Positions 1-12,500 of a DNA stretch of 64,000 bases are shown here, one piece after another (the first letter of the stretch is position 1; each line of letters begins with the position of its first letter). The position numbers and the translations under genes are program-made. Origin of the DNA: Diplonema japonicum. Taxonomy: Eukaryota; Protista; Euglenozoa: Diplonemea. The notes beneath the pieces were generated by a model. The model worked only from the letters and a program-made list of their open reading frames with translations, did no database searches and had not been told where the DNA came from. The stretch spans positions 1 through 64,000 of the forward strand of contig OZ025731.1 of the NCBI GenBank assembly GCA_964019335.1, given 5' to 3'.

Positions 1-1090
1 TGCGGGTTTGCGGGTTTGCGGGTTTTGCGGGTTTGCGGGTTTGCGGGTTTGCGGGTTTGCGGGTTTGCGGGTTTGCGGGTTTGCGGGTTTGCGGGTTTGC
101 GGGTTTGCGGGTTTGCGGGTTTGCGGGTTTGCGGGTTTGCGGGTTTGCGGGTTTGCGGGTTTGCGGGTTTGCGGGTTTGCGGGTTTGCGGGTTTGCGGGT
201 TTGCGGGTTTGCGGGTTTGCGGGTTTGCGGGTTTGCGGGTTTGCGGGTTTGCGGGTTTGCGGGTTTGCGGGTTTGCGGGTTTGCGGGTTTGCGGGTTTGC
301 GGGTTTGCGGGTTTTGCGGGTTTGCGGGTTTGCGGGTTTGCGGGTTTGCGGGTTTGCGGGTTTGCGGGTTTGCGGGTTTGCGGGTTTGGCGGGTTTGCGG
401 GTTTGCGGGTTTGCGGGTTTGCGGGTTTGCGGGTTTGCGGGTTTGCGGGTTTGCGGGTTTGCGGGTTTGCGGGTTTGCGGGTTTGCGGGTTTGCGGGTTT
501 GCGGGTTTGCGGGTTTGCGGGTTTGCGGGTTTGCGGGTTTGCGGGTTTGCGGGTTTGCGGGTTTGCGGGTTTGCGGGTTTGCGGGTTTGCGGGTTTGCGG
601 GTTTGCGGGTTTGCGGGTTTGCGGGTTTGCGGGTTTGCGGGTTTGCGGGTTTGCGGGTTTGCGGGTTTGCGGGTTTGCGGGTTTGCGGGTTTGCGGGTTT
701 GCGGGTTTGCGGGTTTGCGGGTTTGCGGGTTTGCGGGTTTGCGGGGTTTGCGGGTTTGCGGGTTTGCGGGGTTTGCGGGGTTTGCGGGGTTTGCGGGGTT
801 TGCGGGGTTTGCGGGTTTGCGGGGTTTGCGGGGTTTGCGGGGTTTGCGGGGTTTGCGGGGTTTGCGGGGTTTGCGGGGTTTGCGGGGTTTGCGGGTTTGC
901 GGGTTTGCGGGTTTGCGGGTTTGCGGGTTTGCGGGTTTGCGGGTTTGCGGGTTTGCGGGTTTGCGGGTTTGCGGGTTTGCGGGTTTGCGGGTTTGCGGGT
1001 TTGCGGGTTTGCGGGTTTGCGGGTTTGCGGGTTTGCGGGTTTGCGGGTTTGCGGGTTTGCGGGTTTGCGGGTTTGCGGGTTTGCGGGTTT
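1..1090. repeat. (GCGGGTTT)n 8-mer tandem array, telomere-like / G-quadruplex-prone satellite
   Basis: About 135 near-perfect copies, with a cluster of GCGGGGTTT variants near 740-890. The array runs off the window start. The ORFs over it are repeat artefacts. Confidence 0.95.
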
Positions 1091-1094
1091 TTTT

Positions 1095-1166
1095 AAAAAG
1101 GGGGACTTGAGAAAATAAATAAAAAGGGGGACTTGAGAAAATAAATAAAAAGGGGGACTTGAGAAT
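1095..1166. repeat. 26-bp tandem repeat (about 2.7 copies, AAAAAGGGGGACTTGAGAAAATAAAT) between the satellite and the retrotransposon poly(A) tail
   Basis: Copies start at 1095, 1121 and 1147. Confidence 0.9.
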
Positions 1167-1566
1167 GTTTTTTTTTTTTTTTTTTCTTCAAAAGACACAC
1201 AAGGCACGATAAATCTTAAGAGAAAATAAAAATATTCCAAAACAGACAATCAAGTTCCAACCTGGGAGGAAGGCATGGGTTTCTCTTTTTCTTATGGGAG
1301 GGAGAGGGGAAGAAGAAGAAGCAACTCCAAATGATAAAAATTCAAAAATAAAAATCTCAAAAAAGGCTTAAAAGAAGAAGAGGCAAATTCAAAAACATAC
1401 TAGGGAGGAATGAGTGGGGCAGGGGGTAAAATTTAGGAGGGGGAAAGAGGGAGAATCAAAAAAGGGGGGAAAGGGGCAGAGTGGCCAATGTCCATGCGAA
1501 AAAGCATAGAGCGGGGGAAGAAGAAAATCAAAAACAGGAAAAACACATCACCACAAAAGAAAAAAG

Positions 1567-1611
<45 letters not shown>

Positions 1612-1881
1612 GTCGACCGAGATGGTTCCACTTCAAAAAGAAAAAGAAAAAGAAAAACAGAAAAATAAAAAAAAAAAAAAAAAAAAAAGGAAAAACAAAA
1701 AGAAAAAAAAAAAAAAGGAAAAAAAAAAAAAATCTAAGTGGTTCTATCTAGCCTGGCCGTTGTAGCACCTGTTCCTATTCTTTTATTTTTCCCTTTTTTT
1801 TTTCTCAGAAAAAAAAAAAAAAAAGTTTCACATCTTCCTATGGCGGGGGGGGGGAGAACAGCCCCCCACACCCCCGCTGGC

Positions 1882-4800
1882 CTATCTGGCCAGCGAGCCT
1901 TTGGACCTCTTCTTGTGGGGTATGGGCCCCACCCGTGCCCTCCCCGACTCGAGCTGCAGCCAAGCCACCGCACTGTTCACCGGGGCCCAGTTCTCCTTGT
2001 TGCGCACCTTGACCGTGTCCCGCACCAGGTCGTCGCTCCCCAGCTCTTCCATCAACCTGTGCTCCGCCAAGAACTTGAACTGGGGCCCGGTCATCCCCTT
2101 GAGCTCACCCCTGCATATGTTGGCTTCGACCACGGTGCCATCCGCCCCCGTACCCTTCAGATAGATGTAGCCACCCTCCACACAATCCGAGTCAGTACTG
2201 GCCGATCGGGCCCGGGCCCGCTTCTTGTCCTTCTTGCTCCACTTCAGCTCTTCCAGGGTGGGGAGGTCCGTGGCAACCACCTCAGGCCGCCTCTCCCTGT
2301 CTTCCTCCTTCTTCCGGGCCAACAGCCCAAGGTACCTCTCAAAGGAGACGTCCTCGAACAACCCCGGGACCGTCACCACCGCTGACTGCAGGTCGACCTC
2401 TTCAACACCCATCTTCCGCAGATGGTCCTGGACAGTGCGCCTCGTCTCCTTCTCGCAGGGCCCCCTCCCCTCGTAGACGTCGAGGGTGACCTTCCTTCCA
2501 TCCCTCACCCACGCCTTCACTTTGATCAGGTCCTTGACCTTTCCCACTGGGGCCCTTATCCTTGCGTCGCACCTCTCCAAGAACTCACGTAGTGTCACCT
2601 TGGTAGCGCCGGCTCCCGCCGCAATGCCCACTACCCCTTCCTTCCCCGGTGTCGGGTGGTGTCTGCACCCCCGGGTCTGCAACTTGACCACCCTCCATGC
2701 CGTTTCCAGAGTCCCCTTGAGCACGCCACCCTTGAAACGAACAGGTTGCACCGCCGAACACCCACACGCGTACGTGATCTGGAAATCCTGGACCGTCCTC
2801 GGGAACTCGAACTCGCGGTATGTTTCCGACTTCTGCACCTCACAACCCACAATGCGGCTGCGGCGCTCTCCGTCCGACCCACCTTCCAAGCTTGCGAAGT
2901 ACTGCTTTACCATCATGTATCCAAGTCCAGCGATACCAATCTGGCCAGCCATAGCCACCTCCAGTGGAACACCCAGCGACTCGGCCTTCGCAAGAAGCAT
3001 CTCCTCAGTCCTCTCCCTTCCAGGGTCCGTTCCTTCTTCAAGGATGATCTCCACCCGGCCCTCGAACTGGATGATGAACTTGAGCAGTCGGTCCCCCGGC
3101 CTCGCCCTCAGTGGCACCATCGCTCTCGGAATTGGGATGCCCATCACCACATCAATCGGGTCAAGCTGAACGAAGTCTCCCCCTACTTCCACCTGCTGTT
3201 CCCTTTCCGGTGCCCCGACTCCCATCAGCTGATCTCCCTCCGGCGTCTGGATCCCACCCCTAGGTGTGTCAGGCCCCGACTGGCTGCCTCCGCTCGGTGC
3301 GTTCCCGCCCTCTTTGGTCCCTTCGGGGGCGTCATCCGCCTGCGGCTTCAGAGTCCTCCCACCGCCCTGTCTCTTCGCAGCTTGTTCCCTACAGAATTCG
3401 CTCACGGTCATCTTCCTCGTAGCAGTTGTCGCACTCTGGTCCCCCTTGTTCGAGTCCCTCTGGGCCTCCGTATCCCCCTTAGGACACTGGTCCAAGGTCT
3501 GGTTCACCGCAGCGTCAGTCGCCCCTTGTCTCTTCCCATCTTCCTGGGCCTTCGGGTCAAGCTCCCCTCCCTGCCCAGCCCTCTCGCTGGATCCTGTTCC
3601 GACCATCTCCGTGTCTTCTCCTCCCGGCGAGGCTGCTTCGAGTCCTGCTCCCGCTTTCCCTTGTGTTCCACCCTCCACCGGTTCCGCCTTTCGCTGCTGC
3701 TGCATTCGGGCGTCCAGGTCCTTCTTCGTCTGCTCCAGAAGGGCATCCAGCTGGTGGGCCACCGTGATTGGGGGTCCGCCTCCCTGTCCCTTCACTTCCC
3801 TCTCGGACGACTCCTCAGCTTCGGTGGTTTTTTCATTGCCGAAGGAGTCCTCTGTGAGGTCAGTGTTGGATTCAGTGTTGGGTTCGTTGTTCGCTTCCTC
3901 GTTGTCCTTTTTTTCCTCTTCGCCGTCCGGTACCGGGGGCCCTGGATCCAACTGTACAGGCCCTTTGACTAACAGCGCCCCTGCTATCGATCTCATCATG
4001 GCCGTTGACACCTCTTGGACCACACGCCTGTGTATCGAGACTCTGTCCCCGTGAGCCCGCGCAGCTATGCTCCTGGACAGTTTCTTCGTGAGGTAGACTG
4101 CTGCCTCCCCGAACCCCCCAAAGGTCTCCATCGCGAAAGGTACAAAGGCCACGCGTGTCTTGGCGAGCTCCGCCTCATACTTCTGGCGCTTGTAGTGTTC
4201 CGCCTTCGCCGCTGCGTATCCCGCAGTCTTCGCCGCCTGGTTGACACAAGACTCGTTCCTCGGGTGCACGATGACCACGTCCATAGCCATTGGGCGGGAA
4301 CCCCCCACCCCACCTGGGAAGAACACGTCCGCCGGGCGCTGGGACGACCCCGGGATCAGCCCCGTCTTCTCCATCGTTGCGCTCACCCCGGCCCACTGAC
4401 AGTGTCTGTGGATGGTCTCCTTCACCCGGTCGTGCCTCGCAATCCTGGCGTTGCCGCATCCCTGGGCATGGTCACCCCATACGTCCATCCCCTCAGTCTT
4501 GCACCTCGGGTCGTGGCAGCTCTCACCCTGCTTGTAGACCGGAGCCCCCAACCACCACTTGATCAGAGCCCCAAACTCGTTGTCCGACAGCTGGTTGTAG
4601 AAGTCAGGCGTCGCCGTCAACCACGCTCCCGCATAGTGCATTGACTCCGACATCAACCTCGCTCTCGAGCGTGCATCTGCTTTCGCCAAGAGGTCCTCCA
4701 GCGCCTTCTCATCAAGCACCCTAGAGAGCCACCTCTGGCTGCAGATGTGGGGGGCCTTGGCCACCATGTCGGGTGTAATCTGCATGCCGCCCTTCGTCCT

Positions 4801-7383
4801 GTTGAACCACTCGAGCCAGCTCCCCCATACACCCCCTTCCAGCCCATGTTCGTATTTGGGATCCAGCTCCTTGCACAGCTTCATCGTCGACGCCCTCGAA
4901 GCCATGTTGGCCGCGCGCAGGTGCTCCTGGCAGCTCCTCATCCCAAGCCCACCGACTTTTACGGACAGTTTCGCCTGCTGCCATTCTTTCGACCCGTTCT
5001 CGAACTGCATGCCGCACACCTTCGACATCGTCTTCCGCACCATCTCGTCGAACCTGTGCATGACCCCTCCCACATGCGAGTCTGGGACCACTCTCATGTA
5101 AAACACCAGTTTGCTGTATGAGCTGCAATACCGGAGAAGTGTGTACCCTGTCTGCCTCCCCACCTTGGTCAGCATGTCGAAGTTCTCTTCCAGCGCGTCC
5201 AAGCGTTTGTTCAGAAAGGCTTGCGTGTACTCCGGCGATCCTATCGGCGCCCCCAGGAGCATGAAGTTCCTCTCTTTGTGGAAATTCTCTTCTGTCAGGC
5301 CATCGAAGCCTGTGTCCTCCACTGTCTGGGGGAGGTCGCCACTAACCCATATGAGCTCGCACTTCTGGGGTTTCACTTTCAGCCCTATCATTCCGCTCAG
5401 CTCACACAAGATGTTGTACGCCTTTCTCACTTCATCCACATTCCCCACAAGGACGCCATCGTCCAGGTAGAACTGGAGGATGTCCAGGTTGCAGTCTTCA
5501 CTTATCTTGTTCACCAGGGGTTGGATGGCCAGAGAGAACAGCAGCGGTCCCATCGGGTCCCCCTGTTGCACCCCTTCCTGGGACTTAATCACCTTTCCGT
5601 TGTAGTATAATTGGGAGGGCACCCTGTAGCACCAATCGGCCCACGCATACAGCCCCGACGCTTGCTCATAGGCCTGTGAGCACAGCTGCCTCCGACAAAC
5701 ACTGTTGAAGGCGTTGGCGTAGTCGATCTTGAGGATCACCTTGTTTTCCTGCTTGTTGCCCCGTTCCCTGTCCACATACTGCCTGATGGTGTGTATAGCC
5801 GCCTCCATTCCAGCAGGGACCGATACCCCCACCTGGCCGCCTTTCTTCAGGTACGAAGAGGCCACTTCCGGAGCGATCTTCTTCACAAGGGATTTCCCCA
5901 CCAGCCGACGCAGCACATCCCCAACGGCTATGGGCCGCACGTCCCTGTCGTTCTTCTTGAGGGCCACAAGGTTCGCCCCTGCCATCAGCGGAGCCACCTC
6001 CCTAGGGGCCGTGCCTCTAGCTAATGCGTTGACTGCCCTCGTCACCGACATCAAACAGCCTTGAGACTCAAAAGCTCCGTCCACCGCGTCCTTGATGTGC
6101 TGGGCTCTCAGACCAGTCGGTCCCGCAGCAGTCCCCCTCGGGAAGTCCCTGATTGCGTCCAGCACTTCTTCTGGCAAGACTTCTACCGCTTCCTTCGTCT
6201 TCGCCGGGTTGTCCCATTGGGGGTGTAGTGGCTCTGGATGTTTGCTCTGCAGCGCTCTCCAGCAATCCTCATTGTCTTCCGCCAGCCCCTGGGCTACAAG
6301 CGCCGCGTTTCCTGCCGAGAACCTCCCTTTGCTGCACAGTTCCGTGGCCCTGGCGACCTTAGAGACCTCGTCGTTCTTAGGTTCCCCCTTCTCACCTGAT
6401 TCCAGCTTATTCCAGAGGGCCATGTAATTTCCCTTCTCCCACTCCTCCAATCTGGCCTGGACACTCAGCTCCGTCTCCTTGTCCCGCTTCTTCCCTCCCC
6501 TCTTCTTCCACAGGCAGGCTTTGGGGAGCATCGCCACCAGCAGCCAAGCCTCCTCTGTGTTGTCCTTCACCGCCCGGCCCAGAGTGTGCTTAAGGGTAAG
6601 CCCCCACAGTCTTTGAAGGCTCGTCGGGATCGACCCCATGGTCGTGACGTTCATGGCGGCTATGGCTTCCAGGCTGGGTAACTCGGTCCTCGTCGGGGCC
6701 GGCGGGGGGGTCGTGTATTCCCCTTCCCTTCGCACCGCCTTTTTGCACTCGTCGTGGCACCCCTGACCCTTCCACACACAGCCCCTGCACACCAGGCACC
6801 TCTCGAGGTCCAGTCTCCTCAGAACGCTCTCCGGGATCTCATCACTCTCCAGGTGCCCATCCAGGTGACACTTCCATACCCTTGTCGAGTTGAACGGGGT
6901 CGTGCTTTTGCACTTCGACCTAGCGCAGTTCGCCACCGGACAGTACAGGAATTGCTGGTTCCTTGCCCCCATCTGGTCCAACACCCCTGCCTTCCCGTAT
7001 CCAGGGATCGCACGGTCTATTATGTCCCACTCCCCGATGTCCTCACCCGGGGCCTCGGAGGGTTGCTTACCTGCCTTTTGTAGAGCTACCGATTGGGACT
7101 CATCAAGGAGCATCATCATCGACTCCTCCTCTCCGACTGCATACTCGTAGTGGTTGCCGTTGTACGCCAGCACCACCACCTTCTCGTGGTCGGAGTTGTA
7201 CTCCCCTATCATCAGGACTGGGTTGTTCCCCCCAGCAACCACGAGTATCGTGCGGCCAAACGCTTGTGCTGCGGCTGCCAGGCACAAGTGGTCTCCCCAC
7301 GTCGCTGCTGTGCCCATCCCTTCCAAGTACCGGTCCCAACCCTCACTGCAAAACGGGGCATAGTGCTCCTCCCGGTGTTTCAT
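1882..7383 (-). CDS. Retrotransposon polyprotein, main ORF: C-terminal half of OTU protease, zinc fingers, RT, RLE endonuclease and long C-terminal extension
   Basis: 1833-aa ORF. OTU motifs TWGDHLCLAAAAQAFGRTILV and YNGNHYE; CPVANC...HLDGH zinc finger; RT at about 5200-6150; RLE at about 3970-4530. Confidence 0.92.
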   Translation of the reverse strand: MKHREEHYAPFCSEGWDRYLEGMGTAATWGDHLCLAAAAQAFGRTILVVAGGNNPVLMIGEYNSDHEKVVVLAYNGNHYEYAVGEEESMMMLLDESQSVALQKAGKQPSEAPGEDIGEWDIIDRAIPGYGKAGVLDQMGARNQQFLYCPVANCARSKCKSTTPFNSTRVWKCHLDGHLESDEIPESVLRRLDLERCLVCRGCVWKGQGCHDECKKAVRREGEYTTPPPAPTRTELPSLEAIAAMNVTTMGSIPTSLQRLWGLTLKHTLGRAVKDNTEEAWLLVAMLPKACLWKKRGGKKRDKETELSVQARLEEWEKGNYMALWNKLESGEKGEPKNDEVSKVARATELCSKGRFSAGNAALVAQGLAEDNEDCWRALQSKHPEPLHPQWDNPAKTKEAVEVLPEEVLDAIRDFPRGTAAGPTGLRAQHIKDAVDGAFESQGCLMSVTRAVNALARGTAPREVAPLMAGANLVALKKNDRDVRPIAVGDVLRRLVGKSLVKKIAPEVASSYLKKGGQVGVSVPAGMEAAIHTIRQYVDRERGNKQENKVILKIDYANAFNSVCRRQLCSQAYEQASGLYAWADWCYRVPSQLYYNGKVIKSQEGVQQGDPMGPLLFSLAIQPLVNKISEDCNLDILQFYLDDGVLVGNVDEVRKAYNILCELSGMIGLKVKPQKCELIWVSGDLPQTVEDTGFDGLTEENFHKERNFMLLGAPIGSPEYTQAFLNKRLDALEENFDMLTKVGRQTGYTLLRYCSSYSKLVFYMRVVPDSHVGGVMHRFDEMVRKTMSKVCGMQFENGSKEWQQAKLSVKVGGLGMRSCQEHLRAANMASRASTMKLCKELDPKYEHGLEGGVWGSWLEWFNRTKGGMQITPDMVAKAPHICSQRWLSRVLDEKALEDLLAKADARSRARLMSESMHYAGAWLTATPDFYNQLSDNEFGALIKWWLGAPVYKQGESCHDPRCKTEGMDVWGDHAQGCGNARIARHDRVKETIHRHCQWAGVSATMEKTGLIPGSSQRPADVFFPGGVGGSRPMAMDVVIVHPRNESCVNQAAKTAGYAAAKAEHYKRQKYEAELAKTRVAFVPFAMETFGGFGEAAVYLTKKLSRSIAARAHGDRVSIHRRVVQEVSTAMMRSIAGALLVKGPVQLDPGPPVPDGEEEKKDNEEANNEPNTESNTDLTEDSFGNEKTTEAEESSEREVKGQGGGPPITVAHQLDALLEQTKKDLDARMQQQRKAEPVEGGTQGKAGAGLEAASPGGEDTEMVGTGSSERAGQGGELDPKAQEDGKRQGATDAAVNQTLDQCPKGDTEAQRDSNKGDQSATTATRKMTVSEFCREQAAKRQGGGRTLKPQADDAPEGTKEGGNAPSGGSQSGPDTPRGGIQTPEGDQLMGVGAPEREQQVEVGGDFVQLDPIDVVMGIPIPRAMVPLRARPGDRLLKFIIQFEGRVEIILEEGTDPGRERTEEMLLAKAESLGVPLEVAMAGQIGIAGLGYMMVKQYFASLEGGSDGERRSRIVGCEVQKSETYREFEFPRTVQDFQITYACGCSAVQPVRFKGGVLKGTLETAWRVVKLQTRGCRHHPTPGKEGVVGIAAGAGATKVTLREFLERCDARIRAPVGKVKDLIKVKAWVRDGRKVTLDVYEGRGPCEKETRRTVQDHLRKMGVEEVDLQSAVVTVPGLFEDVSFERYLGLLARKKEEDRERRPEVVATDLPTLEELKWSKKDKKRARARSASTDSDCVEGGYIYLKGTGADGTVVEANICRGELKGMTGPQFKFLAEHRLMEELGSDDLVRDTVKVRNKENWAPVNSAVAWLQLESGRARVGPIPHKKRSKGSLAR

Positions 7384-7454
7384 CCATTCTACAACCTCGC
7401 TCCTGATGTGGGTGTGGTCGCCGTAGGCCTCCCCGAGCGAACCGGCCAGGGCGT

Positions 7455-8071
7455 GGGAACATGCAGTTCCCGTCCTTCTCCGTCGATCTCCTCGTCAGCT
7501 TGAAGCTCTTCATGATCTCGTCCACTGACTTGCCGGCCCTGGGTTGTTTGTCGGGGTTCCACAGATTCCGCTGCCTGTGTAGTGCACAGTGCGTCTGGTT
7601 CGACGAGCACGCCGCAGCACACGTTCCACAGAGGTTCACCTTCATGCTCCTCGCCTGCTCTTGTTTCACAAAATGATGGTGGACCGCATTGAGGTGTTTA
7701 ACTAGACAGCTTGCCACACTGGTGCGGAAAGAGCAGTCTTCCATCCGGCATTGATGTTTGTCTGGAACACTACCCTCTCTCGGGAGTGCCACCTCTTCCC
7801 CTCTCTCTCTGTTTTCCTCCGAAGAGGGTCTGTTTTTTACCTCCGTGGAGGGTTCCTCTGGAGAGGGCTCTAAAAATGAAAAAGGGGGGGACAAATGGGG
7901 GGGAGGAGCACCACCCTCTCTCGGGAGTGCCACCTCTTCCCCTTTCTCTCTATTTTCCTCCGAAGAGGGTCTGTTTTCCTCCGAAGAGGGTTCTAAAAAA
8001 AAAAGGGGGGCGGGTGGGGCACTATCCTCTCTCGGGAGTGCCACCCCCCCTTGCCCACAAAAAAGGGATCT
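7455..8071 (-). CDS. Middle segment of the same polyprotein (shifted frame): VALPRE repeats, C2H2 zinc finger and OTU catalytic Cys motif DGNCMF
   Basis: Part of ORF 7343..8206. Removing one C from the CCC run at 7455-7457 gives DGNCMFHALAGSLGEAYGDHTHIRSEVVEWMKHREEHY, continuous with the 1882..7383 ORF. Confidence 0.85.
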
Positions 8072-9051
8072 AAAAAAGGGGGTTTGTCTGTTAACCCAGG
8101 GGATGGGTCTTCCTGGGGTGTGCGGGTGAGCTTGGGGCCTACCGCACGCAGGGTGATCGACACCCTGACACCAGTGGACATCCCGGACGGGATGTGGTGT
8201 GTCCACTGGTGTCTCGCTTCACCTTCCAACAGTGCCCATGAGAAGGGGGGCACCAGGTATCTCGCCACCCTGTCCCCCCTCCTCATGACCATTGTGGTCT
8301 CGGCTCCGTACGAGAGGACTAGGACAATCGGTCCCAGCCTCGCGTCATACTTGTGGGCGGCAATCCCACAACCAGACTTGTACTTGTTGACAAGTACCTG
8401 GTTGGGGACCACCTTGAGCCCTGCGGCGGCGGCCACCTCCCTCACCCACCCCTCCGCCCCCCCTGGGATCCCCGTGGTGGGGCGCACCTTGGCGTTCGTC
8501 CCCTCCCACCGGTACCCGTATTGGAGGGTCTCCCTCCCTGAGTTCCCAGACAGGGCCTCCCACTTTCCTGAAAGCAGGGCTTTCGGGAAGGCAGGGGCCG
8601 GGCCCGTCCTCAACCCGGGAGGGTGTTCACCATACACCAGTACCCACCCCTTTTTTTCTCCCTCTTTTCTTCCCTCTTCAACAATAGCAGGGTCGGCTGC
8701 AGGGGTCGTGGTCGCGGCGGTCGTGGCTGCGGCAGGGGCGGCTGCGGCGGTCTCAGTTGTGGCGATCAGGGCGGCAGGGTCGGCTGCGGCGTTCAGGGCG
8801 GCTGGGGCGGCCGTGGCTGTAGCAGCGGCGGTCAAAACCGCGGTCTCTGCTAGTGATTTTTTTATTTTATTATTTTTTTTTTCTAAAGGGGGGTGGGGGG
8901 ATCTAGGGGGTGGGGGTGGGGATTCATACTGCCCAACCAGATAGTCTGGTTGGGTCGGCCCTGGCGTCGTGTGCAGCCTGGCGGCCTGTCGGGGTTCCTT
9001 CTCCCTGTGGTTTGCGCGGTCACCTCCTCTTGCATTCCGTCTTGGATCCAT
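7993..9051 (-). CDS. AlkB-family 2OG-Fe(II) dioxygenase domain at the N-terminus of the retrotransposon
   Basis: QYGYRW, PNQVLVNKY, GIAAHKYD, IVLVLSYG, LLEGEARHQWTHHI and RVSITLR give the AlkB double-stranded beta-helix motif order. The ATG lies about 170 nt downstream of the SL exon. Confidence 0.88.
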   Translation of the reverse strand: MDPRRNARGGDRANHREKEPRQAARLHTTPGPTQPDYLVGQYESPPPPPRSPHPPLEKKNNKIKKSLAETAVLTAAATATAAPAALNAAADPAALIATTETAAAAPAAATTAATTTPAADPAIVEEGRKEGEKKGWVLVYGEHPPGLRTGPAPAFPKALLSGKWEALSGNSGRETLQYGYRWEGTNAKVRPTTGIPGGAEGWVREVAAAAGLKVVPNQVLVNKYKSGCGIAAHKYDARLGPIVLVLSYGAETTMVMRRGDRVARYLVPPFSWALLEGEARHQWTHHIPSGMSTGVRVSITLRAVGPKLTRTPQEDPSPGLTDKPPFLDPFFVGKGGWHSRERIVPHPPPFFF

Positions 9052-9220
9052 TTTTTATTTTTTTATTTTTTTTTAAAGTGTGTGTTGGGGGAGGGGATCC
9101 TTTCGGTAAGCGGCGGGCAGGCCGACAGGCAAAACAACCCCCCCGGACGACGGCGACGACGGACGACGGACGCAGCGGCAAACCCAGGCAGAGGCGGCAG
9201 GCACCAGCAGAACACGAACG

Positions 9221-9260
9221 ACCAATAAAGTACAGAAACTGTAGCTTTAGAATCGTTGGT
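9221..9260 (-). ncRNA. Spliced-leader (mini-exon) sequence plus GT donor; interrupted or orphan SL RNA gene
   Basis: The minus strand reads ACCAACGATTCTAAAGCTACAGTTTCTGTACTTTATTG|GT. The 3' part CAGTTTCTGTACTTTATTG is the conserved euglenozoan SL end, and the 5' part resembles diplonemid SLs. Confidence 0.92.
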
Positions 9261-9328
9261 GTAGTGAGAGACGCCTCCACGGCCCCGCCGTTACGGCACC
9301 GCGTTCCGCGGTCCCAGAGGGTCCTGAA

Positions 9329-9498
9329 GCGAACAACAAAGACATATAGTCATAAAGAATTATTTTTGTTACAAATATTTATCTTTCAAAAAATGATTTT
9401 ATAACTTTATGCAACTTGTGCCGAGCAAAAAACTTTCGCAGCTTTTTAAAAATCTTTTTTGCTCGTGCGAACAACAAAGACATATAGTCATAAAGAAT

Positions 9499-9505
<7 letters not shown>
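9329..9505. repeat. Dispersed AT-rich ~140-bp repeat with a 39-bp internal direct duplication; second copy at 59290-59434
   Basis: GCGAACAACAAAGACATATAGTCATAAAGAATTATTTTT occurs at 9329 and 9467. Segment 9362-9505 is near-identical to 59290-59434. Confidence 0.9.
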
Positions 9506-9589: not shown

Positions 9590-12500
9590 CAGTGATGGGT
9601 GAATCCTAATTAGGACTAGACCAGACTGGACCGGACCAGACCGGATCCGGCGTGAATTTCGACCCAATTATGCCGGACTGACCGGACTGACCAGACTGAC
9701 CAGACTGGACCGGACCGGACTGGACTGGACTGGACTGAACCGGACCGGACAAGATACAACCACAACACCACATTCCCCCCTTTTTTTTTTGCTGCAGAGT
9801 TCAAACGTATAAACAGATGTCTACAAGAAAAGATGTTACACAGGTACTGAGAGACGACAACAACAACAACAATGAGAAACGAAGAAAAAAAAAAAAAAAA
9901 AAAAACTTTTATCTTCTTTTTCAGGTGGTGGGGATAACATGAAAATATAAGAAAAACATCAGATGTGTTCGCTGTTGACCTCCTCATCGGTCATCACCAA
10001 GCAAACCGCATGAGTGCAGAATCTTGGTTTCCTGGGGTGCCCCAGGACCAGACTGGACCAGACTGGACTGGATCCAGCGTGAATTTCGACCCAATTATGC
10101 CGGACTGACCGGACTGACCAGACTGACCAGACTGGACCGGACCGGACCGGACCGGACCAGACCGGACTGAACCAGACTGGACAAGATACAACCACAACAC
10201 CACATCCCCCCTTTTTTTTTGCTGTGGAGTTCAAACGTATAAACAGATGTCTACAAGAAAAGATGTTACACAGGTACTGAGAGACGACAACAACAACAAC
10301 AACAACGAGAAGAAGAAAAGAAAAAGGAGCAACAGTACTGGTTCCTGTTCATCTTCATCTTCCTCCTCAAAGCCATGTGCCGCTACTAACATTGAAGAAC
10401 TACTCAGTCAAAAACCCGAATGTGGCCCTACTTTAACCTGCACCCAGAAGAAAACTGGGCTTTCTCAGTCTGCGATGTTGCAGTTCATCAGTGGCAAAGG
10501 TAGGAGAAAGAAAAAAAAAGAAAAAAAAAAGGCATTGGCAGTACATTTAAAGCATTCTTTTGGGAAACCGGTGGTAAAAACACGATACCGACTGCAACTG
10601 ACGAGGCAGTGGCTTGGGATGGTACGATTGTTGGTGTCATTCCTGGGGTTGCAGCTGCTTGTGTATATGAGCAGGAGCCTGGAATCATTTTCCACTTCCC
10701 TCCCAAAACTGTGGACGAACGAGTGTACCGCCTTGTAGAAGTTACCTCAACCAACCCCAATCACCTTTCTGAGACGGAAGCAAAGCTGAGGCTTGCACAG
10801 CTTAAGGTGAAGGAGCTACAGGAAAAGCTGAAACACTTTCAGAGTTCCACGTCCGGAGACCTGCTTCACCCCCCACAGACCCTCCCTACACCTGACCAGC
10901 CTGCTGGTGCCAAAGAAGAAAGAGGGGCAGTTTCAATTTGGGAATTAAAAGACTGGAACTACGTCTATGCCTACCCTCGAGCGGTACCACACACACAAGA
11001 AAAAAAAAAAAAAAAAAAATAGGATAAAAAGGACTATGCACCAAACCAAAAATTTTTTTATTCTGCAATTGTGAGTGACAAAAAACGCAAGTGCGAAAAC
11101 CCAAGTTGTACCGTGCACATTGTTAACACAATGGGCAATTTGCAAGATCACTGGATGCGATTCCATAGCTGCCGGAAGAAAAAAGAGGGAAGAGAAAGCA
11201 AAGGCGAGTGCAGAAGCGCGGGAAAAGAAGATGCAGGCTAAGAAAAAGAAAATGGACGAACCCAAGGTGTCACAGCCACAGTCGCAATCGCAGTCACAGT
11301 CACAATCACAGTCACAGGTTCAGAGTTCACCATCTTCAGCTAAAGCCAAGGTAAAAGAAGAAGACGAAGTGGGGGGAAAAAAAAAAAAGAAAAACAAACA
11401 CTAGGTAAGCAATGTTATCAATGAAATGAGAGAACTTCCTGTTCTTGACAGGGTTTGCTTTTTGATCGGTCTGCATTGCCTACCTCTCATCCTGTGTGAA
11501 AGGAATTTTTTTCGTAGCCTGTTTACCCCTGGTAGCCTTGTGGGGATAGACAGGAAGAAAGTGCGGAGCCGCATTCTGGAATTGGGAGAGAGTGTCTTCC
11601 ATTCCATTTTGGAAGGCTTGAGAATGTGTTCTTGATGGTTGATGGTGCTACCTTCAACCGTCGAACCGTTCTTGGCTTCAGCCTTTCGGACGGTGAGCGC
11701 AGCTATTTTTGCAAGGTCTGTTTTTTCAAAAACCTGATACAGAGCGTCCGAACTAGTTTTCTTTTCCAACTGAGGGCAGTTTTCTAGGAGTGGGAAATCA
11801 TCTGAAGGACAAACACAACACAGATAATTGATCTCTCGAAGGTGAGAGTGACTGCTGCAGAGATCACAAAGCACATCACGGAGACGATCAATGAGCTTCG
11901 AACGGTTTGGGGGAGAAAGGGAAAGAAGGGGATAAAAAGGGAAGAAGCGGGAAAAAAAAGAAAAAAAAGAGGGGAATCCTTGTTTTTTCTGTCTGTGCAG
12001 ACAACGCCAGCGCCATGCAGTGTGCGCTTGAGAAGATCGCCGAGCAGTTTTGCTTGACCCAGATGCAAGACACTGTGGACACTGACACTGCAGCCACCGA
12101 CACTGACACCGACACTGATTCAGGTATTCTTTGTGTTTTTTGTGGCCAGGAACAGACTCTCCATGTAGAGTTTGTTTTCATGTTATATTGATCTTTTTTT
12201 TTTTTTAAAAGACACCGAATCTACAACCGGGTCGATCTATTCATTTTCCAAGACTGAAAGCACTGTATTAGATTCTGCACTTGACAGTGCTGCCGAAGAG
12301 CTGCAGTTGAGTGGAGTGTTGGCCTACCATTGTGTGGCCCACTCACTGCAGCTCTCACTGGGGGACGTTTTCAAAGTTCCTCGCTTTGAAAAGGTGCTAT
12401 GCAAGGTGAAGGTATAAAACGAAAAAAGGGAGGGGGAAAAGAAATAATATTGTTAAACTTGTCGTTTTGGTTTTTCGCAAAAAGAAAAAGAAGAAAAAAA

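What the first reader, a model, noticed from the sequence alone, without database searches (positions are those of the whole stretch)
1882..9051. SL-associated CRE retrotransposon encoding an AlkB dioxygenase + OTU protease + RT-RLE polyprotein
Seen: three ORFs on the - strand join through one -1 shift (about 8071-8044) and one +1 shift (7455-7457) into about 2390 aa. The order is AlkB (about 8530-8140), C2H2 zinc finger, OTU (Cys at 7463-7465, His at 7150-7152), zinc finger, RT, RLE, long tail. The first and last ORFs are in the same frame. Known: CRE/SLACS elements normally carry zinc finger-RT-RLE. Accessory cysteine proteases occur in some other non-LTR clades (Ulp1-like in NeSL, Josephin-like in Dualen). 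AlkB together with an OTU-like domain is known from some plant RNA-virus replicases (flexiviruses). I do not know this pairing from a CRE element. Inference: the element carries its own nucleic-acid demethylation/repair or modified-base-binding module, plus a deubiquitinase or polyprotein-processing module. That would be a virus-like counter-defence toolkit.
Basis: partly seen in the sequence, partly recalled or inferred. Interest (0 to 1): 0.93.

Follow-up and report, generated by a model that had tools for sequence, protein, structure and literature searches.

The report
Telomeric retrotransposon carrying AlkB and OTU
The window holds a damaged copy of a chromosome-end jumping gene of a diplonemid-like protist; every copy starts with the spliced-leader sequence, the first protein carries an AlkB demethylase domain and the second an OTU protease beside the reverse transcriptase, an accessory set I found described for no element of this class.

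Summary
The domains are real. Pfam finds AlkB (E 5e-12), OTU (3e-12 in an intact copy) and RT (2e-16). RLE motifs follow the RT.

AlkB belongs to the element. At least 61 copies exist. The unit always starts at spliced-leader (SL) nucleotide 2-3, upstream of the AlkB ORF, whatever lies beside it. A diverged subfamily keeps the ORF (dN/dS 0.23). Diplonema papillatum gene models combine AlkB, OTU and RT.

The polyprotein with programmed frameshifts is not supported. The window copy is defective:
- a 1256-bp deletion at 7764/7768;
- Asp to Tyr in the AlkB HxD motif (60 of 61 copies keep Asp).

Intact copies have two ORFs. ORF1 is AlkB plus a basic and a hydrophobic region. ORF2 is ZnF-OTU-ZnF-RT-RLE-tail.

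The element does not sit in an SL RNA gene. It lies at contig ends, with its poly(A) joined to (CCCGCAAA)n.

Other first readers of this scan noted the same family on other pieces of this genome.

I rate it a new variant of a known kind, interest about 0.7.

The parts
1..1090 (-). Telomere-type array. It reads (CCCGCAAA)n on the element's sense strand and (TTTGCGGG)n on the + strand, and runs to the contig start.
   Evidence: The same array follows the 3' end of copies at at least nine other contig ends (L002-L006, L010, L011, L017, L018).
1088..1094 (-). Short A tail (A7) at the element's 3' end, joined directly to the telomere-type repeat.
   Evidence: Other copies have A7 or up to about 60 A at this place.
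1095..1881 (-). 3' UTR, pyrimidine-rich on the sense strand. It ends in 2.8 units of a 26-nt repeat (1095-1166; CTCAAGTCCCCCTTTTTATTTATTTT).
   Evidence: The number of units ranges from 0 to 16 between copies.
1882..7764 (-). Remnant of ORF2. It contains ZnF1 7673-7756, OTU 7141-7474, ZnF2 6853-6945, RT 5347-5958 (YLDD at 5455-5472), CCHC 4456-4518 and RLE 4177-4338. An acidic low-complexity stretch starts at 3927, and the last ~430 aa (from 3177) are of unknown fold.
   Evidence: The copy in L004 has this ORF uninterrupted (2037 codons).
7455..7457 (-). Lesion: one extra C (CCC against CC) that splits the OTU domain.
   Evidence: 22 of 22 other copies lack it. table 4 (one letter left out at 7455 in X4 and X5).
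7764..7768 (-). Lesion: junction of a 1256-bp deletion. It removes the basic and hydrophobic end of ORF1, the ORF1 stop and the start of ORF2.
   Evidence: L004 7076-8322. table 7 (loose ends at 7764 in X4 and X5)..
7768..8030 (-). Two units of a repeat of about 138 nt. In intact copies this is a coding linker of ORF1 (..LEPSPEEPSTEVKNRPSSEENRE..).
7993..9051 (-). Remnant of ORF1. It has a low-complexity N-terminus and the AlkB domain (8146-8547), and is cut short here by the 1-nt deletion.
8065..8067 (-). Lesion: one C missing (CCC against CCCC). With CCCC the AlkB frame runs on into the linker and the basic region.
   Evidence: L013. table 4 (a G put in behind 8064 in X2, X4 and X5). frame 1.
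8347..8349 (-). Lesion: a TAT (Tyr) codon where the Asp of the HxD iron-binding motif should be.
   Evidence: 60 of 61 genomic copies read CAC AAG GAC GAC; only the window copy reads AAG TAT GAC.
9052..9222 (-). 5' UTR (GTCGTTCGTG...). It is shared at about 80% identity with subfamily B.
9223..9259 (-). Spliced-leader sequence (CCAACGATTCTAAAGCTACAGTTTCTGTACTTTATTG). This is the first base of the repeated unit.

Best explanation
Window 1095-9259 (minus strand) is a degenerate copy of a roughly 9.4-kb non-LTR retrotransposon of the restriction-like-endonuclease (RLE) type. Its 3' end joins the telomere-type array at 1-1090. The family sits at chromosome ends of a diplonemid-like euglenozoan. 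SHOWN: (1) Intact copies run in this order: SL sequence, 5' UTR, ORF1, ORF2, 3' UTR with 26-nt repeats, A tail. (2) ORF1 is about 750-800 aa and holds a low-complexity N-terminus, an AlkB dioxygenase domain with the full HxD...H and RxSxTxR motifs, a repeat linker, a very basic stretch and hydrophobic segments. (3) ORF2 lies in the -1 frame and holds C2H2 finger, OTU, C2H2-like finger, RT, CCHC plus PD-(D/E)xK endonuclease, and a long tail. (4) The DNA copies start at SL nucleotide 2-3 whatever lies upstream. (5) The 3' ends point to the contig end and join (CCCGCAAA)n. Tandem copies are separated by a few telomere units or nothing. 5'-truncated and internally deleted copies occur. INFERRED: (a) The transposition intermediate is an mRNA that carries the SL, most simply acquired by trans-splicing. 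It is copied by target-primed reverse transcription from a nick in the G-rich strand of the telomere repeat. (b) ORF1p binds the element's RNA through its basic part and brings an AlkB oxygenase to the single-stranded RNA or cDNA, where it removes base methylation that would block or mark the template. (c) The OTU domain acts as a deubiquitinase or as a processing protease of the 2000-aa ORF2 product. The window copy cannot make any of these proteins whole.
For: Copies and boundaries: searches show at least 24 copies at 98-100% identity. One search shows 40 AlkB segments at 93-99%. In 13 loci the AlkB segment lies 1529-1693 nt upstream of the ORF2 5' part, against 296 nt in the window. One search finds 61 copies. 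The 5' end is the SL in five different contexts. Lesions. Domains: Pfam. AlkB matches ALKBH8 at 4.5e-9. The AlphaFold model has pLDDT 89.9 and its best folds are ALKBH6, ALKBH8, NMAD-1 and ALKBH2. OTU matches OTUD5 and OTUD3 at about 3e-6, with Cys and His aligned. The RT matches R2 proteins at about 1e-7. Selection: the AlkB domains of subfamilies A and B are 69% identical, with dN/dS 0.23 at dS about 1. Conservation: D. papillatum models P0214, P0215 and P0213 carry AlkB and OTU, and the first two also RVT_1. P0214 is 34% identical to ORF2 over 1356 aa and 37% to the AlkB domain. Telomere link: 27 of 31 minus-strand copies lie within 16 kb of a contig start, and none of the 30 plus-strand copies lies within 100 kb of one; junctions are. 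SL recycling: 194 exact SL copies are followed by many unrelated sequences, and some have a second SL cut after its internal CAG or AAG. Basic and hydrophobic ORF1 end.
Against: No single locus on hand spans an intact ORF1. Its continuity rests on overlapping natural copies (window, L013, L004) and on run contigs. How ORF2 is translated is unknown: there is no slippery heptamer in the ~10-nt overlap with ORF1. No enzymatic activity is shown. The RNA evidence comes from contigs of runs only guessed to be RNA, from related organisms. Most SL-headed families have G or GT right after the SL, which also fits an origin at the exon-intron border of SL RNA genes. The proximal copy at a chromosome end (window, L017, L018) has unique DNA rather than telomere repeats at its 5' side. 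The strand polarity of the terminal repeat is the reverse of canonical telomeres, so the insertion model rests on an end structure that is not understood.
Confidence: 0.75

Rival explanations
1. One 2390-aa polyprotein, AlkB-ZnF-OTU-ZnF-RT-RLE, is made through a programmed -1 and a programmed +1 ribosomal frameshift.
For: The frames can be joined at the stated places. T-rich and C-rich runs lie near the first break. D. papillatum gene models put everything in one protein.
Against: Both breaks are absent from the other copies. The in-frame join of the linker to the zinc finger exists only because of a 1256-bp deletion in this copy. In intact copies ORF1 ends with TAA and ORF2 lies in the -1 frame with no slippery site. 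A weaker form, in which ORF1 and ORF2 of intact copies are fused by some recoding event, stays open at perhaps 0.2.
Confidence: 0.04
2. AlkB is a host gene of the subtelomere. It merely lies beside the retrotransposon and was multiplied with it by recombination between chromosome ends.
For: All copies are subtelomeric and nearly identical, as gene conversion between ends would also give.
Against: The repeated unit begins at the SL upstream of AlkB. That SL is directly preceded by the poly(A) of another element (L008, L034), by 4 telomere units (L015) or by unrelated unique DNA (window, L017, L018). The diverged subfamily B has the same SL-UTR-AlkB head. D. papillatum models join AlkB with OTU-RT. 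In natural copies AlkB is in the same ORF as the basic region just upstream of ORF2.
Confidence: 0.04
3. The SL head comes not from trans-splicing but from an ancestral insertion just behind the SL exon of an SL RNA gene, CRE/SLACS-like. Transcripts then start at the SL RNA promoter and carry the exon along. Alternatively, the RT switched template onto SL-bearing RNA.
For: Nearly all SL-headed families continue with G, mostly GT, as an SL RNA intron would. Internal SL joints show 1-3 nt of microhomology with the SL end rather than clear AG acceptors. The RT relatives in D. papillatum are auto-named SLACS.
Against: The flanks upstream of the SL are unrelated, and the window's flank-SL junction is unique in 62.5 Mb. 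Copies start at SL nucleotide 2-3, as expected for cDNA of a capped RNA. Doubled SLs with the inner one cut after its own CAG or AAG (C8, C12, C20, C58, C60) are what trans-splicing onto a genomic SL copy followed by retroposition gives, as described for dinoflagellate retrogenes (PMC12014239, PMC5585692; abstracts listed).
Confidence: 0.15
4. The AlkB domain is a catalytically dead RNA- or DNA-binding module, or a relic, and has no enzymatic role in the element's cycle.
For: The window copy has Tyr in place of the iron-binding Asp. No close AlkB relative exists outside diplonemids: the best hit among 1.84 billion representatives has E 5.5e-15 at 34% identity.
Against: 60 of 61 copies, subfamily B and D. 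papillatum all keep H-x-D, the second His and RxSxTxR. dN/dS is 0.23. The model is a confident AlkB fold.
Confidence: 0.12

Closest known systems
CRE-group elements of trypanosomatids (SLACS, CRE1/CRE2, CZAR)
   Same: They are RLE-type non-LTR elements with N-terminal C2H2 fingers, RT, and a C-terminal CCHC plus PD-(D/E)xK nuclease. They occur in Euglenozoa and have a link with the SL sequence. The D. papillatum homologues are auto-annotated 'SLACS 132 kDa protein'. The clade list is in PMC4640811.
   Different: Those elements interrupt SL RNA genes at a fixed site inside the exon (my knowledge). Here the nearly whole SL is the element's own 5' end in any context, and the elements lie at telomeres. 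ORF1 carries AlkB and ORF2 carries OTU. The RT phylogeny against CRE references could not be run.
Telomere-repeat-specific non-LTR elements: MoTeR of Magnaporthe (RLE type; Starnes 2012, cited in PMC4640811) and TRAS/SART of Bombyx (APE type)
   Same: Fixed orientation in the telomere repeat, a poly(A) or 3' end joined to the repeat, head-to-tail arrays with short telomere tracts between copies, and truncated copies.
   Different: Those elements have no AlkB, no OTU and no SL head. Details of MoTeR are from memory, because the paper is not held.
Phalaenopsis Ty3/Gypsy elements with an extra ORF encoding an active ALKBH5-like m6A demethylase (PMC9289625)
   Same: A retrotransposon lineage that fixed an AlkB-family oxygenase as an extra coding part. 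Its proposed target is the element's own RNA.
   Different: That is an LTR element of plants, and its AlkB was taken from the host ALKBH5/9/10 clade. Here the element is a non-LTR of a protist, AlkB is part of ORF1, and the nearest solved relatives are ALKBH8 and ALKBH6.
Replicases of Flexiviridae (carla-, fovea-, trichoviruses and others) with AlkB followed by OTU and a peptidase (PMC544882)
   Same: The same two accessory domains in the same order, in a selfish element that replicates through single-stranded RNA.
   Different: Those are RNA viruses of plants with one replicase polyprotein. There is no sequence closeness beyond the family level. Here the two domains are in two ORFs.
[quoted passage not shown]
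   Same: An RLE-type non-LTR with a papain-fold cysteine protease or isopeptidase upstream of the RT. Relatives of the present RT in other eukaryotes carry OTU at the C-terminus or UCH domains.
   Different: The protease family differs (C48 Ulp1 against OTU), and so does the target (SL or U2 genes against telomere repeats).
SL-tagged retrogenes of dinoflagellates, 'mRNA recycling' (PMC5585692, PMC12014239)
   Same: DNA copies that begin with the SL, and relic SLs cut at an AG inside the SL.
   Different: There it concerns host genes copied by unknown RTs. Here an autonomous retrotransposon itself, and at least ten other repeat families, carry the SL.

Membership tests
AlkB family of Fe(II)/2-oxoglutarate oxygenases (Pfam PF13532) | Profile match above the curated cut-off | tested here: met
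   46.8 bits against a cut-off of 31.2, E 5.3e-12. ALKBH8 is the best solved relative at 4.5e-9.
AlkB family of Fe(II)/2-oxoglutarate oxygenases (Pfam PF13532) | Iron-binding H-x-D...H triad | tested here: not met
   This verdict is for the window copy, which has H-K-Y (TAT at 8347-8349). For the family the feature is met: 60 of 61 copies read H-K-D, subfamily B and D. papillatum read H-T-D, and the second His (WTH) is present in all.
AlkB family of Fe(II)/2-oxoglutarate oxygenases (Pfam PF13532) | 2OG-binding R-x-S-x-T-x-R strand and double-stranded beta-helix fold | tested here: met
   RVSITLR lies at 8146-8166. R172, S174 and T176 are invariant in 61 sequences. The model has pLDDT 89.9 and hits ALKBH6, ALKBH8, NMAD-1 and ALKBH2 at E 1e-9 to 6e-11.
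AlkB family of Fe(II)/2-oxoglutarate oxygenases (Pfam PF13532) | Oxidative demethylation or hydroxylation of nucleic acid bases | not testable with these tools
   This needs an enzyme assay.
OTU cysteine proteases / deubiquitinases (PF02338) | Profile match and the catalytic Asp/Cys box and His box | tested here: met
   In an intact copy the score is 47.4 bits against a cut-off of 23.3, E 3.3e-12. DGNCMF and GNHYEY align to the catalytic boxes of OTUD5 and OTUD3. In the window copy the domain is split by the extra C at 7455-7457.
Non-LTR retrotransposon of the RLE type | RT followed by CCHC and a PD-(D/E)xK nuclease; A tail; 5' truncations; no LTRs | tested here: met
   RVT_1 at 1.6e-16, and the best solved relatives are R2 proteins. 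The motifs CHDPRC..H..C, RPADV, MDVVIV and KRQKY are present, and the whole block aligns with D. papillatum P0214. A tails run from 7 to about 60 nt and truncated copies exist. The nuclease was judged by motif only; no profile was available.
CRE clade (SLACS/CRE/CZAR) | RT groups with CRE references in a phylogeny | not tested
   No reference sequences could be obtained by reference. The only support is the indirect auto-annotation 'SLACS' on D. papillatum homologues.
CRE clade (SLACS/CRE/CZAR) | Site-specific insertion inside SL RNA genes | tested here: not met
   The SL is at the element's 5' end with unrelated upstream flanks. The window's flank-SL junction is unique in the genome. The 3' ends join telomere-type repeats.
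Telomere-repeat-targeting retrotransposons (functional class: MoTeR, TRAS, SART) | Fixed orientation and a direct 3' junction with the terminal repeat, with arrays interspersed with repeat tracts | tested here: met
   Whether the nuclease cuts the repeat was not testable.
SL-tagged retrocopies (mRNA recycling) | A genomic SL at the 5' end, an A tail, and relic SLs truncated at an internal AG | tested here: met

The most novel reading that the evidence does not exclude
The AlkB domain of ORF1p is a template-conditioning enzyme. It rides on the element's own SL-capped RNA and erases Watson-Crick-face methylations, so that the element's RT can copy the RNA to its end. Candidate targets are cap-4-type m6,6A or m3U of the spliced leader, or m1A, m3C or m6A elsewhere. 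This would be a natural counterpart of the AlkB pre-treatment used in the laboratory before reverse transcription of modified RNAs. The OTU domain would in parallel strip ubiquitin-like marks from the RNP. Together they would form a self-carried anti-restriction and template-repair kit that evolved convergently with that of flexiviruses.
Probability: 0.15. Interest if true: 0.9.

Novelty: new variant of a known kind. Interest (0 to 1): 0.72.

Why it matters
Non-LTR retrotransposons are thought to carry a very small tool set: an RNA chaperone, an RT and a nuclease.

Here a young family of at least 61 copies, with relatives in Diplonema papillatum, has fixed a nucleic-acid oxygenase in ORF1p and a deubiquitinase-type protease in ORF2p. 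That is the same pair plant flexiviruses carry. It makes the question of what base methylation and ubiquitin do to retroelement RNPs directly testable in a protist.

The family also gives a clean case of an autonomous element whose intermediate is an SL-bearing mRNA. It builds the ends of most chromosomes of this genome.

A practical point follows. The 'dozen AlkB-type genes' read as epigenetic regulators in the D. papillatum genome paper (PMC10161547) include retroelement ORFs, among them models auto-named ALKBH8-like tRNA methyltransferase.

Tried and rejected
- Word-indexed homologue search with the AlkB region gave no hit. The exhaustive phmmer search then showed only distant relatives.
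- A metagenome scan with an AlkB alignment gave 504 pattern matches, none confirmed.
- The ORF2 tail (last 478 aa) gave no Pfam hit and no Atlas hit. The single-sequence AlphaFold model has pLDDT 41 and is unusable, so no fold search was run on it.
- The basic and hydrophobic part of ORF1 gave no Pfam hit and only a weak match of the hydrophobic segment to P0214 (E 0.068).
- An Atlas search with the RT gave only unnamed RVT_1 clusters and no clade name.
I used coordinate and pattern searches instead.
- The MoTeR paper is not held.
- I considered that the window's upstream flank is an SL RNA gene promoter, because depth at 9313-9500 is very high in run X5. I rejected this because the flank-SL junction is unique.
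- I considered that Asp to Tyr marks the whole subfamily, and rejected it.
- I made no joined or read-through protein. Broken ORFs were searched as separate pieces, or as natural uninterrupted copies by reference.

Full report
WHAT IS IN THE WINDOW

On the minus strand there are three ORFs: 7993-9051, 7343-8206 and 1882-7383.
- Pfam places 2OG-FeII_Oxy_2 (AlkB type) in the first, at E 5.3e-12, above the curated cut-off.
- Pfam places RVT_1 (1.6e-16) and the C-terminal half of an OTU domain (2.9e-5) in the last.
- The OTU Cys box DGNCMF lies in the middle ORF.
- Behind the RT come CHDPRC..H..C, RPADV, MDVVIV and KRQKY. This is the CCHC plus PD-(D/E)xK layout of restriction-like-endonuclease (RLE) non-LTR elements.
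- R2 proteins are the best solved relatives of the RT, at about 1e-7.

Upstream of the first ORF lie a 171-nt leader and the sequence CCAACGATTCTAAAGCTACAGTTTCTGTACTTTATTG (9259-9223). By my knowledge of the Diplonema and kinetoplastid leader, this is a diplonemid-type spliced leader (SL) lacking its first 2-3 bases. Downstream of the last ORF come about 790 nt of pyrimidine-rich UTR, 26-nt repeats, A7, and then 1090 bp of (CCCGCAAA)n running to the contig start.

THE REPEATED UNIT

The genome (62.5 Mb in 132 contigs) holds at least 24 copies of the ORF2 part at 98-100% identity. It holds at least 40 scored copies of the AlkB segment at 93-99%, and 61 copies by an active-site pattern.

In 13 loci the AlkB segment lies 1529-1693 nt upstream of the point equivalent to window 7764 (searches compared). 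In the window the distance is 296 nt.

The homology between copies starts exactly at the SL, whatever lies upstream:
- unique DNA (window, L017, L018);
- the A tail of a preceding element (L008, L034);
- four telomere units behind a poly(A) (L015).

A second subfamily, B, is about 80% identical in DNA and has the same head of SL, UTR and ATGGAYCC.. AlkB ORF. AlkB is part of the element.

THE WINDOW COPY IS DEFECTIVE

1. One extra C at 7455-7457. All 22 other copies on hand read ..DGNCMFHALAGSLGEAYGDH.. in one frame, and contigs of runs X4 and X5 lack the letter.
2. One missing C at 8065-8067. The C13 copy and contigs of X2, X4 and X5 have CCCC. With it, the AlkB frame of the natural C13 copy runs on without a stop through the repeat linker into a basic region (frame 1). 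That overlaps the frame that ends GADPDR* in L004.
3. 1256 bp are missing between 7768 and 7764 (loose ends).
4. The Asp of the HxD motif is Tyr. 60 of 61 copies read CAC AAG GAC GAC, and only this one reads AAG TAT GAC.

The apparent single reading frame results from lesion 3. The two 1-nt changes lie in short C runs and could be assembly errors at this copy. In neither case are they programmed.

INTACT ARCHITECTURE

- **ORF1**, about 750-800 aa: a low-complexity N-terminus, AlkB, 2-3 repeat units, a stretch with 32 Lys/Arg in 75 residues, and hydrophobic segments.
- **ORF2**, in the -1 frame. It is open for 2037 codons in L004, with the first ATG at MDLDDEH. Pfam finds OTU at 3.3e-12 and RVT_1 at 1.6e-16.
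- Only about 10 nt lie between the ORF2-frame stop and the ORF1 stop, and I see no slippery heptamer there. How ORF2 is translated is open.

DOMAIN CHECKS
- **AlkB.** The best solved relative is the oxygenase domain of ALKBH8. A model built on 61 sequences has pLDDT 89.9. It matches ALKBH6, ALKBH8, NMAD-1, Ofd2, ALKBH2, ALKBH5, ALKBH3 and E. coli AlkB. His, the second His and RxSxTxR are invariant columns, and Asp is nearly invariant.
- **Selection on AlkB.** Between subfamilies A and B the domain is 69% identical, with dN/dS 0.23 at dS about 1. That indicates purifying selection.
- **OTU.** The Cys and His boxes align with those of OTUD5 and OTUD3.
- **Distant AlkB relatives.** Among 1.84 billion representatives the best hit has E 5.5e-15 at 34% identity.

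RELATIVES

Among those distant AlkB hits are D. papillatum models. Their cluster mates are P0214 (2635 aa, KAJ9442719.1), P0215 and P0213.
- All three carry AlkB and OTU in one gene model. P0214 and P0215 also carry RVT_1.
- They are named 'SLACS 132 kDa protein' or, for the cluster representative P0074, 'tRNA (carboxymethyluridine(34)-5-O)-methyltransferase'.
- P0214 aligns with ORF2 over 1356 aa at 34% identity, covering finger, OTU, finger, RT and RLE. It aligns with the AlkB domain at 37%.
- It has a basic and a hydrophobic stretch in between.

The architecture is therefore old within diplonemids.

RT relatives at 30-36% identity occur in Ephydatia, Symbiodinium, Closterium and many unnamed eukaryotic contigs. 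Some have OTU at the C-terminus or a UCH domain instead. None of the four that I scanned has AlkB.

THE SL HEAD

There are 194 exact SL copies, 219 when two mismatches are allowed, scattered over the contigs. They are followed by at least ten unrelated sequence families.

Several copies have a second, inner SL that starts right after its own CAG or AAG (C8, C12, C20, C58, C60). That is what results when a genomic SL copy is transcribed, trans-spliced at an AG inside it and copied back into DNA. The same pattern is described for dinoflagellate retrogenes (PMC12014239, PMC5585692).

I therefore read the SL as the 5' end of the RNA intermediate. Two facts keep an SL-gene origin or template switching alive as a rival at about 0.15. 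First, G or GT follows the SL in most families. Second, the variant joints show 1-3 nt of microhomology with the SL end.

CHROMOSOME ENDS
- 27 of 31 minus-strand copies lie within 16 kb of a contig start, and none of the 30 plus-strand copies lies within 100 kb of one.
- Where a fetched locus was cut by the contig's end, plus-strand copies lie 6-9 kb from that end.
- The 3' end always faces the end and joins (CCCGCAAA)n.
- Tails vary from A7 to about 60 A. Tandem copies, 5'-truncated copies and a bare poly(A) between telomere units occur.
- In L017 and L018 the repeat is joined to eroded 3' UTRs, which looks like end healing.

This fits target-primed reverse transcription from a nick in the G-rich strand of the repeat, as for other telomere-specific elements. 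That the nuclease makes this nick is an inference.

READS

Four runs were laid, all as contigs.
- X4 and X5 behave like DNA of this or a near organism and show the majority form.
- X1 and X2 are only guessed to be RNA. They come from other organisms and carry about 6% differences. Their depth on the SL is about 200 times that on the element.
- X1 and X2 cover parts of ORF2, and X2 also covers 8022-8419. They join the SL to internal places near 8017, 6508 (the deepest), 5742 and 4125.
- These joints may be internal trans-splice sites or SL-headed truncated copies. Contigs cannot tell which.

WHAT IS KNOWN
- RLE clades and the Ulp1 protease of NeSL and Utopia: PMC4640811.
- AlkB followed by OTU in flexivirus replicases: PMC544882.
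- An active AlkB in orchid Ty3/Gypsy elements: PMC9289625.
- The D. papillatum genome paper mentions SLACS-like RT models and 'a dozen AlkB-type genes' separately and does not connect them (PMC10161547).
- Seven full-text searches found no description of an AlkB- or OTU-bearing non-LTR element, nor of this telomeric family.

MECHANISM

Shown: the structure, copy history, selection and positions described above.

Inferred:
1. ORF1p binds the element's RNA through its basic part and brings AlkB to single-stranded RNA or cDNA.
2. OTU acts as a deubiquitinase or as a processing protease.
3. Insertion is by target-primed reverse transcription into the terminal repeat.

LIMITS
- No reference TE sequences were available for a tree.
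- No raw RNA reads were available.

Noticed in passing
window 1-1090; ends of L002-L006, L010, L011, L017, L018: The terminal 8-mer repeat has reversed polarity for a telomere. The strand that runs 5'->3' towards the contig end is the C-rich CCCGCAAA. Eroded element 3' UTRs are joined directly to it (..TTTTAAG|CAAACCCGCAAA.. in L017; CATTCT|GCAAACCCG in L018), as if this strand were the one extended. A TERT-like ORF exists: a Telomerase_RBD match of 28.4 bits in a 1086-aa open frame at G000:C41:533974-534300.
   Followed up: partly
genome-wide; L031-L033: There are 194 exact SL copies dispersed over the contigs, heading at least ten unrelated repeat families (for example SL+GTGTCCGACCGTGCC, SL+GTATCGACCGTGCCA, SL+GTACCCAATCTGATC, SL+GTGGTGGGGATAACA). 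Some have doubled SLs with the inner one cut after CAG or AAG. This is large-scale retroposition of SL-bearing RNAs, as known from dinoflagellates.
   Followed up: partly
window about 9790-9870 (plus-strand sense): A relic of another SL-headed family (GTGGTGGGGATAACATG.., the family of L031) lies in the opposite orientation just upstream of the element, without its SL.
   Followed up: no
window 9313-9500: Depth is very high in the DNA-like run X5: 111,835 against about 2,500 on the element. Within the window the motif AATAATTCTTTATGACTATATGTCTTTGTTGTTCGC occurs twice. This is a very high-copy repeat of unknown kind and is not an SL RNA gene flank.
   Followed up: partly
L008 1-912, L034 1501-1861; G000:C24:7178-39113: Subfamily B of the element has 69% aa identity in AlkB and its own 5' UTR, GTCGTCTGTG... 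It often lies directly behind the A tail of a subfamily-A copy. SL+B heads recur every 10,659 bp on C24, which suggests a tandem array.
   Followed up: partly
L004 7352-8485 (minus); P0214 residues 640-720: The C-terminal part of ORF1 has hydrophobic, membrane-helix-like segments after the basic stretch (clearest at ORF residues ~267-299; a weaker one, 337-358). The D. papillatum homologue has the same. This is unusual for a LINE ORF1 protein.
   Followed up: partly
P0006, P0007, P0030, P0060 (relatives from unnamed eukaryotic contigs): RT relatives outside diplonemids carry a weak OTU match in the C-terminal tail, or UCH (PF00443) domains. Deubiquitinase-type domains may therefore have been gained repeatedly in this RT lineage.
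   Followed up: no
P0068, P0074 (D. papillatum KAJ9439924.1, KAJ9446222.1): GenBank names these proteins tRNA (carboxymethyluridine(34)-5-O)-methyltransferase. P0074 carries the AlkB and OTU domains of the element and clusters with the AlkB+OTU+RT models, so it is a retroelement ORF. P0068 shares only the AlkB domain. The names come from the AlkB domain's likeness to ALKBH8.
   Followed up: partly
L003 about 420-500, L015 8150-8340, L020/L025/L026: Complex local rearrangements occur inside telomeric arrays: a bare A48 tract between telomere units, an SL-UTR piece fused to an 84-nt RT fragment, and nested duplicated ORF2 pieces on C115.
   Followed up: no
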